From assembly GCF_001194135.2 (NCBI RefSeq), contig NC_068998.1, positions 900,619 through 964,618 on the forward strand: 64,000 bases of DNA, read 5' to 3'. The stretch is from Octopus bimaculoides (taxonomy: Eukaryota). This document shows positions 12,874 to 15,329 of the stretch, piece by piece. The position numbers were made by a program, and so were the translations under genes. Positions within the stretch are counted from its first letter, which is position 1. Each line of letters opens with the position of its first letter. The notes under the pieces are model-generated. The model did no database searches, had not been told where the DNA came from, and worked only from the letters and a program-made list of their open reading frames with translations.

Positions 12874-15329
12874 GTAAGTATACGCTTGACGAATATCGCT
12901 TTCTTACTCTTTGTCTTTTACCGGATTATCGAATCGGACCATATATATATACAGTATATGTATGTATGCATGTATGTATGTATGTATGTATGTATGTATG
13001 TATATGTGTGTGTGTGTGTGTGTGCGTGCGTATACGTGTGTACATGTGTGTGAATGTTTGTGTGTGTGTGTGTGTGTGTGTGCATACGCATGCATATATA
13101 TGTATATATATATTCGAAGCACAAAAGAAAATACGTTTTGGTATTTAGGCTCCGTCCTAATTATACCAGTGTGGTCCTGGTCCAAGGTCGACTTGCTTTT
13201 CAATAATCGATTACGGACGAGATCGATAAAATATGTAACGAAGTACTGGAGTCGATACAACCGAGTAACATATCTGAAGGTAGTGCTCCAGCATAGCCGC
13301 AGTCCATTGCTTGAACCCAGTAAAAGAATAAAATAAAAGTGTATTATTATATTTGTTTATATCGTCACCAACATAAAATATTGCATTATTCTCGTAAAGG
13401 GATGAAAACATCTAATTTCTACCAAAATCACTGAATTCTAAGTAAAAGTCTTGTGTTTAATCAAACTTAATTGTAATATATTCTATAGAATTGTCGCCTT
13501 CAATTTACATCAAAAGGTTTCTTTCTTAAAAATATCCAATATTTTGTGTTGGTGAAGTATTAATATATTTTTTTCTGTTTTCATGTTCTCTTACCTCAGA
13601 ATTCTCGCCTCCGCTGAGAACATTCGCCGAATATATGACTGGTTTCATCATCATTTCTGGTTTTGATGTTTATTATAGGGGTATTGATGATGAACCTATC
13701 AGCTGCTCTTTTTGCCTCGAATATAACTGGTACAAAAACACCAGACAACTGTCGGAAAACACAAAATACCAACAAAAACAAAAGCCAGAGGAACAATTTG
13801 CTAAAAAACGAAGGAAAAATGGGGGGTGGAAGCGACTGGTCGGAGAAAGAATTAGGATAAATTTTAACTATTTCATTTTCCATTTCAGACCAAGGAAGAA
13901 TATTTTTTTTTTGTAGATTTCGTTTTAAAATCTAAACTGCAAGTTACCCCATCCACTTCATTAAACAAGAACTTTTTTACAGAAGATTCAGGTGTTGTAG
14001 CCATAGTCACAGCTGAAGCTTTGCTACCAGATTGTAATTTCGTCTTGTAGACTCGGAAGAAAAGATGAAATTAAATATTTAATCCATGCAGTCATTGATC
14101 TTCATATTTTTCCCATGCTGCACAGAGGACATGCATGGAAGCGACAAATTTACATTTCTTTTATATCTCATCCTTCTTGACAGCAGTTATAAAAAATATC
14201 CTATTTGAACTAATTCTAGGGAAAGAAAAATGGATACATTTATCTCAAGACAATGTGGATGTCGTGTCACCAACAGTTTGCTTATGTCATAGCTATTAGA
14301 GACGGTTCTTAATTCTCGCTGCCTCATTCCTCCTCATAACAAACAGGTACCATATCAGTAAACCTGTACTACTGTCAACAACTGGAGCACTGTCTTATTA
14401 ATAACTGTTTCTTGATTTCGCTCCTTGAACAAAAAACAGGAAAAAAGTCCTTGTATTCCACTTCGGATCACAGAACTCGCTGGTGATTTCGGTCAGCTCT
14501 GAGTTGAAGACAACATCTGGTCTTGATCCGAACCAATTCGAGCAGAATCAATCAAACCAAATGGAAATAACCTGCATATCAGATTATCCTTTAATCTTTA
14601 ATCCTGTCACATACATAATTAATTCTTGCTTTCTTTCTCTTTGTTCAAATTATTATTTATTGTTATTATTATTATGACTAATTTTTTTTTCATTTGTTTT
14701 GCTCAGTAATCATGACAAGTTTTAACTATTTTTAGGCTCCAAAAAGAGTGAAGTTGTCCCAGAGACAGATGCAGGAGCTGAAAGAGGTAGGGCACAGACA
14801 AAATAAAGGGAAATAAACAAATCACTTCGTGTTAAATGTTCCATAGTCTTCCCACCCTTTGAAATCCTCTTCCCTCGTTTTTATGTTTCAGGCCGCCTCT
14901 CGCAAAAAGACCAACCCCAGTAGACCCCGTACACAAAGAGCAACATCGAATATATTTGCCATGTTTAACCAAAATCAAATTCAGGAGTTCAAAGAGGTCT
15001 GCTATAGATTAAAAATAAATAAGAAAGGCAAAAAATACAGGAAGAAAAAGAAGATTGTCTTTCTATGGAGACATGAAAAGCTTCTTCCGTGTTATGAGAG
15101 AGGCTTTCCTATGAATGTGGTGACGCCTCCGCAACACGCTTTCTTTTCTATACTTGTTCTTATTTTCTCGGCATGGCTCGTTGTTATATACATATATATG
15201 GCTCTATGTATATCTATTACAATATTACTATGATAATATTTAATACTTTACGGTAGTTTCTTCTTAAAAAGCGATATCTTGACCTCTCTACTGCGTAACT
15301 AACGGATCGGCCTTTGGTTGTATATCTTC

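What the first reader, a model, noticed from the sequence alone, without database searches (positions are those of the whole stretch)
14736..14996. One RLC gene encodes two myosin regulatory modes via tandem alternative N-terminal exons
Seen in sequence: two paralogous phase-0 exons 105 nt apart, both ending in ...Q-x-Q-E-x-K-E. Exon A (17 aa) has no basic-RATS site and matches the squid mantle RLC N-terminus. Exon B (35 aa) carries the full MLCK/ROCK consensus [15 protein letters not shown]. Established knowledge: molluscan muscle myosin is switched on by direct Ca2+ binding at the ELC/RLC interface, smooth/non-muscle myosin II is switched on by RLC Thr18/Ser19 phosphorylation, and 5' splice variants of RLC are known in scallop. 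Inference: this locus lets a cephalopod graft a phosphorylation switch onto a Ca2+-regulated muscle RLC body in a tissue-specific way (e.g. arm/mantle versus visceral, vascular or sucker muscle). Exon A is invisible in the ORF track and easily missed in annotation.
Basis: partly seen in the sequence, partly recalled or inferred. Interest (0 to 1): 0.82.

Follow-up and report, generated by a model that had tools for sequence, protein, structure and literature searches.

The report
Octopus myosin light chain splice pair
The octopus muscle myosin regulatory light chain gene really has two alternative second exons, one giving the classic squid-type protein and one adding a kinase target site, but both forms are already in public annotation and scallops have long been known to have the same arrangement.

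Summary
The window is Octopus bimaculoides chromosome CM046618.1 and carries one myosin regulatory light chain (RLC) gene. After the exon encoding MADD come two phase-0 exons with AG/GT borders: 2A (14736-14786) and 2B (14892-14996). Each can splice to exon 3 (24401).

Exon 2A gives the 156-aa squid-type muscle RLC. Exon 2B gives a 174-aa RLC with the canonical [15 protein letters not shown] kinase site.

It is not new. Both proteins are exact RefSeq entries (XP_014777426.1 and XP_014777425.1), and both isoforms are annotated in O. sinensis and O. vulgaris. The same upstream/downstream exon pair, 66-73 nt apart, is present in abalone, Biomphalaria and an oyster. Going by NCBI's isoform names, the oyster pair matches the scallop RLC-a/RLC-b isoforms.

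Exon 2B is under purifying selection. In Argonauta it is intact though unannotated, and as conserved as the constitutive exons while the introns are unalignable.

Exon 2B is the canonical RLC N-terminus, so probably the ancestral one.

Tissue-specific use and a phosphorylation switch in cephalopods are plausible but untested. I found no cephalopod transcript evidence for isoform B.

The parts
12854..12873 (+). First coding exon (acceptor ccag|, ATG at 12862; encodes MADD), shared by both isoforms. An upstream 5'UTR exon is implied by the acceptor.
   Evidence: both RefSeq isoforms start with MADD
14736..14786 (+). Alternative exon 2A, 51 nt, phase 0: [17 protein letters not shown]. Gives the 156-aa squid-type muscle RLC without an MLCK site.
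   Evidence: 100% aa conserved in O. sinensis and Argonauta (5 nt changes, all synonymous)
14787..14891 (+). 105-nt intron between the two alternative exons. Its last ~43 nt are conserved with Argonauta.
   Evidence: homologous intron is 106 nt in O. sinensis, 367 in Argonauta, 73 in Haliotis, 71 in Biomphalaria, 66 in Saccostrea
14892..14996 (+). Alternative exon 2B, 105 nt, phase 0: [35 protein letters not shown]. Gives the 174-aa RLC with the canonical Thr/Ser phosphorylation site. Its donor is the weak GTCTG.
15073..15135 (+). Intronic block conserved between Octopus and Argonauta, 77-139 nt downstream of exon 2B. Candidate splicing-regulatory element.
   Evidence: no significant RNA fold; no Rfam match
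15171..15184 (+). Second conserved intronic block, GCATGGCTCGTTGT. It holds the only GCAUG (Rbfox-type motif) near the alternative exons in both Octopus and Argonauta.
24401..24476 (+). Exon 3 ([26 protein letters not shown]), the common acceptor for 2A and 2B. Carries the EF-hand 1 divalent-cation loop.
24767..24868 (+). Exon 4
25340..25418 (+). Exon 5
26183..26231 (+). Exon 6. It contains ENMGDNF, whose Gly is the equivalent of scallop Gly117.
27116..27217 (+). Last coding exon including stop TAA. It contains IIKGK, whose first Lys is the equivalent of scallop Lys149.

Best explanation
This is the Octopus bimaculoides muscle-type myosin II regulatory light chain gene, named 'LC-2, mantle muscle' in RefSeq.

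Shown:
- Exons 2A and 2B are an ancient pair of tandemly duplicated, phase-0 cassette exons.
- Each encodes the N-terminal extension plus the start of helix A (…QxQxQExKE).
- In the annotated products, either one or the other is joined between exon 1 (MADD) and exon 3.
- 2A yields the abundant 156-aa cephalopod muscle RLC. It has lost the kinase site, so the myosin carrying it can only be controlled by direct Ca2+ binding at the ELC/RLC/heavy-chain interface.
- 2B yields a 174-aa RLC with the same body but the canonical RLC phosphorylation domain: Arg at P-3, P-6 and P-8, then Thr22-Ser23, then N-I-F.

Inferred:
- Use of the two exons is mutually exclusive in vivo.
- Isoform B is a minor or cell-type-restricted form. 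Regulated splicing would set its inclusion, through the weak GTCTG donor, the conserved flanking intron and a conserved downstream GCAUG.
- An MLCK, twitchin-kinase or ROCK-type kinase phosphorylates it. Phosphorylation then adds to or modulates Ca2+ control (release of the switched-off head-head state), as in scallop catch muscle RLC-a.

The exon pair predates the split of cephalopods, gastropods and bivalves. Exon 2B is probably the ancestral-type N-terminus, and exon 2A is the derived one whose site was lost in cephalopods.
For: - Gene structure with canonical AG/GT at all 8 coding exons.
- Isoform A is identical to XP_014777426.1 and isoform B to XP_014777425.1. The same pair is annotated in O. 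sinensis and O. vulgaris. The window is identical to CM046618.1.
- Exon 2B is intact with its splice sites in Argonauta hians, where it is unannotated. It shows 6 synonymous and 4 non-synonymous codon changes, all non-synonymous ones in the first 14 residues. The core [21 protein letters not shown] has 4 synonymous and 0 non-synonymous changes.
- Nucleotide identity to Argonauta is 89.5% for exon 2B, against 87-95% for constitutive exons, while the introns are unalignable.
- The same A-then-B order with a 66-73 nt intervening intron is found in Haliotis, Biomphalaria (plus a third exon) and Saccostrea.
- Full-length ORFs on 0.9-2 kb contigs, probably transcripts from other molluscs, carry one exon type each.
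- The exon-B N-terminus aligns with MYL9 '[27 protein letters not shown]'.
- The body is closest to the squid LC-2 of PDB 3i5f (285 bits) and keeps scallop Gly117 and Lys149.
- Scallop heavy chain plus ELC carrying a smooth-muscle RLC is activated by either Ca2+ or phosphorylation (review PMC4914028).
- Catch muscle has a catch-specific phosphorylatable RLC isoform (PMC12040844).
- Placopecten RLC sequences in PDB (2os8_B, 3pn7_B) have identical bodies and differ only at the N-terminus.
Against: - I found no transcript-derived cephalopod sequence with exon 2B. All isoform-B entries come from genome annotation, whereas isoform A is present in Logan/JGI transcript assemblies of several cephalopods.
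- No squid or cuttlefish B-type sequence was found.
- Reading frame does not enforce mutual exclusivity, because both exons are symmetric. An intron of 105 nt (367 nt in Argonauta) does not obviously enforce it sterically either.
- O. vulgaris annotation also lists a skip-both product of 139 aa.
- Phosphorylation, the kinase, the tissue distribution and the heavy-chain partner are all untested.
- I could not establish whether octopus has a separate non-muscle RLC gene (one search returned only vertebrates).
Confidence: 0.78

Rival explanations
1. Isoform B is not a muscle isoform. It is the light chain of non-muscle myosin II in all cells, so this single gene supplies both the muscle and the cytoplasmic RLC. 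The 'switch' would then be ordinary non-muscle myosin II regulation, not a second mode for muscle myosin.
For: - The exon-B N-terminus is nearly identical to MYL9/MYL12 around the site.
- The body scores higher against vertebrate smooth/non-muscle RLC (about 170 bits) than against vertebrate striated RLCs (below the 1e-40 cut).
- I could not find a separate octopus sqh/MYL12-type protein (one search was uninformative).
Against: - Brunet et al. 2016 report separate striated-type and smooth/non-muscle-type MRLC genes in the annelid Platynereis and date the duplication to the bilaterian stem (PMC5167519). A separate octopus gene is therefore expected.
- Typical non-muscle RLCs have TTMGDRF-type bodies, unlike ENMGDNF here.
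- In scallop the phosphorylatable splice form is a catch-muscle myosin subunit.
Confidence: 0.15
2. Exon 2B is a decaying relic or an annotation artefact that is not used. The gene makes only the squid-type isoform A.
For: - Only isoform A is seen in transcript-derived assemblies of cephalopods.
- Argonauta annotation lists only isoform A.
Against: - The exon has an open frame, intact AG/GT and conserved flanking intron in three octopods.
- It is as conserved as constitutive exons while the introns are saturated.
- The core has only synonymous changes.
- Homologous B-type exons appear in full-length ORFs on short, transcript-sized contigs of gastropods and bivalves.
Confidence: 0.04
3. Both exons are normally included together, or both skipped, so the two-isoform picture is wrong.
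For: - Both exons are phase 0 and multiples of 3, so co-inclusion (191 aa) and skipping (139 aa) stay in frame.
- A skip form is annotated in O. vulgaris.
- Some genome-annotation models from gastropods concatenate the exons (P0005, P0017).
Against: - The crystallised squid LC-2 sequence goes straight from the A-type N-terminus into AFTMIDQ.
- Full-length ORFs on short, transcript-sized contigs carry one exon type each.
- Co-inclusion would duplicate the start of helix A.
- The concatenated models are 'partial' or 'hypothetical' annotations with no sign of transcript support.
Confidence: 0.03

Closest known systems
Scallop adductor myosin RLC isoforms (Patinopecten RLC-a / RLC-b; Placopecten catch versus striated RLC; PDB 3pn7/3ts5/3tuy versus 2os8)
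   Same: One RLC body carries alternative N-termini. One form has an R-x-x-T-S-N-V-F kinase site and one lacks it, on a Ca2+-regulated molluscan myosin. In an oyster genome the two N-termini are tandem exons 66 nt apart, in the same order as in octopus. The phosphorylatable form is catch-muscle specific.
   Different: In bivalves the upstream (A-type) exon keeps RATSNVF and the downstream one has lost the arginine (AATSNVL or AATSSVL). In octopus it is the reverse: upstream 2A lost the whole site and downstream 2B keeps it. Octopus has no catch muscle. Function and tissue distribution in cephalopods are unstudied.
Vertebrate smooth/non-muscle RLC (MYL9, MYL12A/B) phosphorylation domain (Thr18/Ser19)
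   Same: Exon 2B aligns residue for residue: QRATSN(I/V)FAMF(N/D)Q(N/S)QIQEFKEAF. It has Arg at P-3 and basic residues at P-6 and P-8.
   Different: The body is the molluscan muscle type (ENMGDNF, 285 bits to squid LC-2) rather than TTMGDRF. In vertebrates the N-terminus is constitutive, not an alternative exon. P-7 is Pro instead of Lys.
Squid mantle muscle LC-2 (PDB 3i5f_B)
   Same: Isoform A aligns over its whole length (E=1e-84), including the [17 protein letters not shown] N-terminus.
   Different: No B-type counterpart has been described or found for squid in the data I could search.
Gastropod RLC genes (Haliotis asinina, Biomphalaria glabrata) with two or three tandem N-terminal exons
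   Same: Same exon order, phase and short A-B intron. Biomphalaria also shares the GTCTG donor on exon B (Haliotis has GTGAC).
   Different: Both the A- and B-type exons keep the RA(T/P)SNVF site. A third exon ([13 protein letters not shown]…) lacks the arginines. Octopus has only two exons.

Membership tests
Myosin II regulatory light chain (EF-hand superfamily) | Four EF-hand architecture with a divalent-cation loop in EF-hand 1 and full-length similarity to solved RLCs | tested here: met
   PDB hits to squid, scallop and smooth-muscle RLCs at E=1e-84 to 1e-47 over the whole length. Precomputed Pfam EF-hand families are listed for the identical proteins. The loop [12 protein letters not shown] is present.
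Ca2+-regulated molluscan muscle myosin RLC | Gly117 (supports the ELC Ca2+ site) and Lys149 (needed for intrinsic regulation), in scallop numbering | tested here: met
   The alignment to 1b7t_Y puts octopus ENMGDNF Gly on scallop G117 and IIKG Lys on K149. The role of these residues is taken from PMC4914028. Ca2+ regulation itself is not testable here.
Mutually exclusive tandem-duplicated exons | Adjacent exons of the same phase with homologous sequence encoding the same structural element | tested here: met
   The exons are 105 nt apart, both phase 0-0, with a shared Q-x-Q-x-Q-E-x-K-E tail (helix A start). Lengths differ (51 versus 105 nt).
Mutually exclusive tandem-duplicated exons | Transcripts contain exactly one of the two exons | tested here: inconclusive
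   RefSeq isoforms hold one each. Full-length ORFs on short, transcript-sized contigs of other molluscs hold one type each. No octopus RNA-seq was accessible, and a skip-both model exists in O. vulgaris.
MLCK/ROCK-type RLC phosphorylation site | Thr-Ser acceptor with Arg at P-3, basic residues at P-6 to P-8, and hydrophobic N-V/I-F after the site | tested here: met
   In [12 protein letters not shown] there is Arg at -3, -6 and -8 relative to Ser23. It aligns to K11-K12-R13-P-Q-R16-A-T18-S19-N-V-F of MYL9.
MLCK/ROCK-type RLC phosphorylation site | Actual phosphorylation with an effect on myosin activity | not testable with these tools
   Needs a kinase assay or phosphoproteomics. The only precedent is the scallop-hybrid and scallop RLC-a literature.
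Molluscan RLC-a / RLC-b alternative N-terminus system | Orthologous tandem exon pair in the same gene position in other mollusc classes | tested here: met
   Found in Haliotis L003, Biomphalaria L004 and Saccostrea L005: A-type then B-type exon, introns of 73, 71 and 66 nt, followed by the exon-3 AFTMIDQ. NCBI names the oyster products 'RLC A-like' and 'RLC B-like'.
Non-muscle (sqh/MYL12-type) RLC gene | Body of the TTMGDRF/ILKHGAKDKDD type, orthologous to sqh/MYL12 | tested here: not met
   The body is ENMGDNF…[11 protein letters not shown]. All 120 best relatives are of the lophotrochozoan/platyhelminth NMGDNF type. Only the exon-2B N-terminus resembles MYL9/12.

The most novel reading that the evidence does not exclude
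An ancestral pair of phosphorylatable N-terminal exons has been turned independently, in different mollusc classes, into a 'phosphorylatable / non-phosphorylatable' toggle by loss of the site in a different exon each time. Cephalopods lost it in the upstream exon. Bivalves lost it in the downstream exon. Gastropods keep both and have a third exon without it. In coleoid cephalopods this would leave bulk muscle myosin purely Ca2+-regulated. A minor exon-2B isoform would then give dual Ca2+ and phosphorylation control to particular muscles, or would double as the non-muscle myosin II light chain.
Probability: 0.3. Interest if true: 0.5.

Novelty: already known. Interest (0 to 1): 0.25.

Why it matters
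For a genome scan this is a correct reading of an already-annotated locus, not a discovery. What remains of value is comparative. The locus shows that the scallop 'RLC-a/RLC-b' phenomenon is a conserved exon pair across molluscs. The kinase-site exon is probably the ancestral one. Cephalopod bulk muscle uses the derived, site-less exon.

No paper I could find studies the phosphorylatable isoform in cephalopods. Knowing where isoform B is expressed (for example heart, vessels, viscera, suckers or non-muscle cells) and whether phosphorylation modulates Ca2+-regulated myosin would be a modest but real contribution to comparative muscle physiology.

Tried and rejected
1. Searching for a separate octopus non-muscle RLC with human MYL12B as query returned only vertebrate clusters in the 120 rows shown. 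The question stays open.
2. A search with only the isoform-B N-terminus returned 20 short fragments, none cephalopod.
3. A degenerate DNA pattern for the cephalopod-specific 2B/exon-3 junction ([15 protein letters not shown]) in JGI metagenome contigs gave 9 transcripts. All are non-cephalopod RLCs with NVGDQ(F/Y) bodies.
4. An RNA-structure explanation for mutually exclusive splicing was not supported. The conserved intronic block does not fold better than shuffles (z = -0.7 and +0.15). Rfam gave only sub-threshold hits on TA/TG simple repeats.
5. Steric exclusion by a too-short intron fits the 66-106 nt introns of most species but not the 367-nt intron of Argonauta. I did not adopt it.
6. 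A search for a third alternative exon in the 9.4-kb intron found none.
7. Other ORFs in the window had no Pfam match and sit on low-complexity repeats.
8. Literature searches for the RefSeq accessions and for cephalopod RLC phosphorylation found nothing. Kumar et al. 2011 (PMC3207169) is not held.
9. Isoform look-ups for Biomphalaria X2, C. virginica, Mya and Lingula failed because only the longest product per gene is indexed.
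Full report
**What is in the sequence**

On the + strand the window carries one recognisable gene, a myosin II regulatory light chain (RLC). I mapped its coding exons by tblastn and by reading the splice sites:

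| Exon | Coordinates | Notes |
|---|---|---|
| 1 | 12862-12873 | MADD; preceded by an acceptor, so a 5'UTR exon lies upstream |
| 2A | 14736-14786 | alternative |
| 2B | 14892-14996 | alternative |
| 3 | 24401-24476 | |
| 4 | 24767-24868 | |
| 5 | 25340-25418 | |
| 6 | 26183-26231 | |
| 7 | 27116-27217 | ends in stop TAA |

All exons have AG/GT borders. They are 105 nt apart, both phase 0 and multiples of three. A pattern scan of 10000-24400 finds no third exon of this kind.

**Identity and prior annotation**

The two spliced products were looked up by exact sequence.
- 1-2B-3…7 (174 aa) is RefSeq XP_014777425.1, 'myosin regulatory light chain LC-2, mantle muscle isoform X1' of Octopus bimaculoides.
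- 1-2A-3…7 (156 aa) is XP_014777426.1, isoform X2.
- The gene lies on CM046618.1, and that record is base-for-base identical to the window.
- The same two isoforms are annotated in O. sinensis (XP_029645813.1 and XP_029645814.1) and in O. vulgaris (CAI9736424.1 and CAI9736422.1). O. vulgaris also has a skip-both 139-aa model.

In Argonauta hians it is exon B that is missing from the annotation.

**Is exon 2B a real, selected exon?**

I fetched the orthologous loci of O. sinensis (L001) and Argonauta hians (L002).
- In O. sinensis exon 2B differs by one synonymous base.
- In Argonauta it is intact with tttcag|…|gtctg borders.
- Compared with O. bimaculoides it has 6 synonymous and 4 non-synonymous codon changes. 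All non-synonymous changes fall in the first 14 residues.
- The core [21 protein letters not shown] has four synonymous and no non-synonymous changes.
- Nucleotide identity to Argonauta is 89.5% for 2B and 90.2% for 2A, against 87-95% for the constitutive exons.

The introns are otherwise unalignable, with three exceptions:
- about 43 nt upstream of each alternative exon;
- a block at 15073-15135;
- a short GCATGGCTCGTTGT block at 15171.

Constitutive exons carry only 2-13 nt of conserved flank. This pattern is what one expects of regulated alternative exons.

**How old is the arrangement?**

The relatives found with isoform B show that many molluscs, and also Lingula and a nemertean, have predicted isoforms differing only in this N-terminal segment. 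I checked three genomes directly.

| Species | A-type exon | A-B intron | B-type exon | Extra |
|---|---|---|---|---|
| Haliotis asinina | …RQASNVFAKMSKKTMQEMKE | 73 nt | [33 protein letters not shown] | |
| Biomphalaria glabrata | A-type present | 71 nt | B-type present | third exon [23 protein letters not shown] |
| Saccostrea cucullata | …[23 protein letters not shown] | 66 nt | AQQQKVRAATSNVLTKFNQRVIQEMKE | |

- NCBI names the oyster-type products 'RLC A, smooth adductor muscle-like' and 'RLC B, smooth adductor muscle-like'. These are the two scallop smooth-muscle RLC names.
- PDB sequences of Placopecten RLCs (2os8_B and 3pn7_B) have identical bodies and differ only at the N-terminus.
- A review states that catch muscle has a second, catch-specific RLC isoform with a phosphorylation site (PMC12040844).
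- Full-length ORFs on contigs of 0.9-2 kb are too short to hold the multi-kb genes with their introns, so they are probably spliced transcripts. Each carries exactly one exon type.

The exon pair therefore predates the divergence of the three large mollusc classes, and the phenomenon itself is known.

**Which exon is ancestral?**

Exon 2B aligns residue for residue with vertebrate MYL9/MYL12: QRATSN(I/V)FAMF(N/D)Q(N/S)QIQEFKEAF, with Arg at P-3, P-6 and P-8. This motif is the general RLC N-terminus. That it is general rests on established knowledge of the vertebrate smooth, cardiac and skeletal RLCs.

Exon 2A shares only the helix-A tail. Its gastropod and bivalve counterparts still contain RATSNVF, so the site was lost in the cephalopod copy. 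In bivalves it is the downstream exon that lost the arginine.

The switch is the older state, and cephalopod bulk muscle uses a derived exon that dropped it.

**How it most likely works**

Shown:
- Two alternative products share a body that is 285 bits from the squid LC-2 of the Ca2+-regulated squid S1 structure.
- That body keeps the equivalents of scallop Gly117 and Lys149. A review ties these residues to the ELC Ca2+ site and to intrinsic regulation (PMC4914028).

Inferred:
- Isoform A supports purely Ca2+-switched myosin.
- Isoform B can in addition be phosphorylated at Thr22/Ser23 by an MLCK-family or Rho kinase, modulating or adding to Ca2+ control.

This is biochemically plausible. Scallop heavy chain plus ELC carrying a smooth-muscle RLC is activated by either Ca2+ or phosphorylation.

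Splice choice is probably regulated, for three reasons.
- Exon 2B has a weak GTCTG donor that is also found in Argonauta, Biomphalaria and Saccostrea.
- The flanking intron is conserved.
- A conserved GCAUG lies downstream.

I found no RNA structure that could enforce exclusivity. Reading frame does not enforce it either.

**What remains uncertain**

- I could not see RNA-seq. Every cephalopod isoform-B entry I found comes from genome annotation, whereas isoform A is in transcript assemblies of several cephalopods.
- Two further searches and a metagenome scan found no squid or cuttlefish B-type sequence.
- I also could not decide whether octopus has a separate non-muscle RLC gene. Brunet et al. 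2016 report separate striated and smooth/non-muscle MRLC genes in an annelid, so I consider the rival 'isoform B is simply the non-muscle RLC' less likely, but it is not excluded.

**Verdict**

The finding is a correct reading of the sequence and a reasonable physiological hypothesis. However, the isoforms are already public, the architecture is pan-molluscan, and a phosphorylatable and a non-phosphorylatable RLC isoform are long known in scallop. Interest is low to moderate. The small new points are the reciprocal loss of the kinase site in different exons in different classes and the conserved splicing-signal candidates.

Noticed in passing
window 15073-15135 and 15171-15184 (Argonauta L002 12089-12152 and 12403-12416): Two intronic blocks downstream of exon 2B are conserved between Octopus and Argonauta although the rest of the intron is unalignable. 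The second block holds the only GCAUG (Rbfox-type motif) in the neighbourhood in both species. Neither folds significantly and neither has an Rfam match.
   Followed up: partly
window 14997-15001; L002 11881-11885; L004 11894-11898; L005 3331-3335: The donor of the B-type exon is the weak, non-consensus GTCTG in Octopus, Argonauta, Biomphalaria and Saccostrea (Haliotis has GTGAC). The A-type exon has GTAGG in Octopus, Haliotis and Biomphalaria. A conserved weak donor hints at regulated inclusion.
   Followed up: partly
protein P0099 (NCBI 'hypothetical protein JF116_10150', Campylobacter fetus subsp. venerealis, 338-nt contig): This 99-aa 'bacterial' protein is identical to the C-terminal 99 residues of the O. 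vulgaris/O. sinensis RLC (it has PEGTLRN). It is almost certainly octopus contamination in a bacterial assembly.
   Followed up: no
proteins P0005 (Biomphalaria, 231 aa, partial) and P0017 (Bradybaena, 190 aa): These genome-annotation models string two or three of the alternative exons together in frame. That is possible because all the exons are phase 0 and symmetric. It is a likely systematic annotation artefact for this gene family.
   Followed up: partly
proteins P0055/P0060/P0084 (Dreissena), P0076/P0120 (Mya), P0109/P0110/P0115 (Lingula); window 24767-24868: Bivalve and brachiopod RLC genes also have two or three alternative versions of the exon-4 region (…PxDxxLxxMxKExPGQLNFTxFL…). tblastn finds only one exon-4 copy in the octopus window.
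   Followed up: partly
proteins P0124, P0125, P0126 (O. vulgaris CAI9736421.1, CAI9736423.1, CAI9736425.1): O. vulgaris annotation lists extra products of this gene. One has a 23-residue upstream extension (179 aa). One skips both alternative exons (139 aa). One starts at the internal Met of exon 2A (141 aa). Whether any is real is unknown.
   Followed up: no
window 12940-13110, 15320-15400, 18360-18445, 22740-22875, 23840-24365, 25640-25790: Long TA/TG/TATG simple-sequence tracts fill the introns. They produce overlapping six-frame 'ORFs' and many sub-threshold Rfam 'miRNA' hits (mir-297, mir-3149 and others), all far below gathering scores.
   Followed up: yes
window 54312-54629: A tandem array with a 14-nt unit (TGTGATTAGTATAA) is organised in a 143-nt higher-order repeat (2.2 copies, 97% matches).
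   Followed up: no
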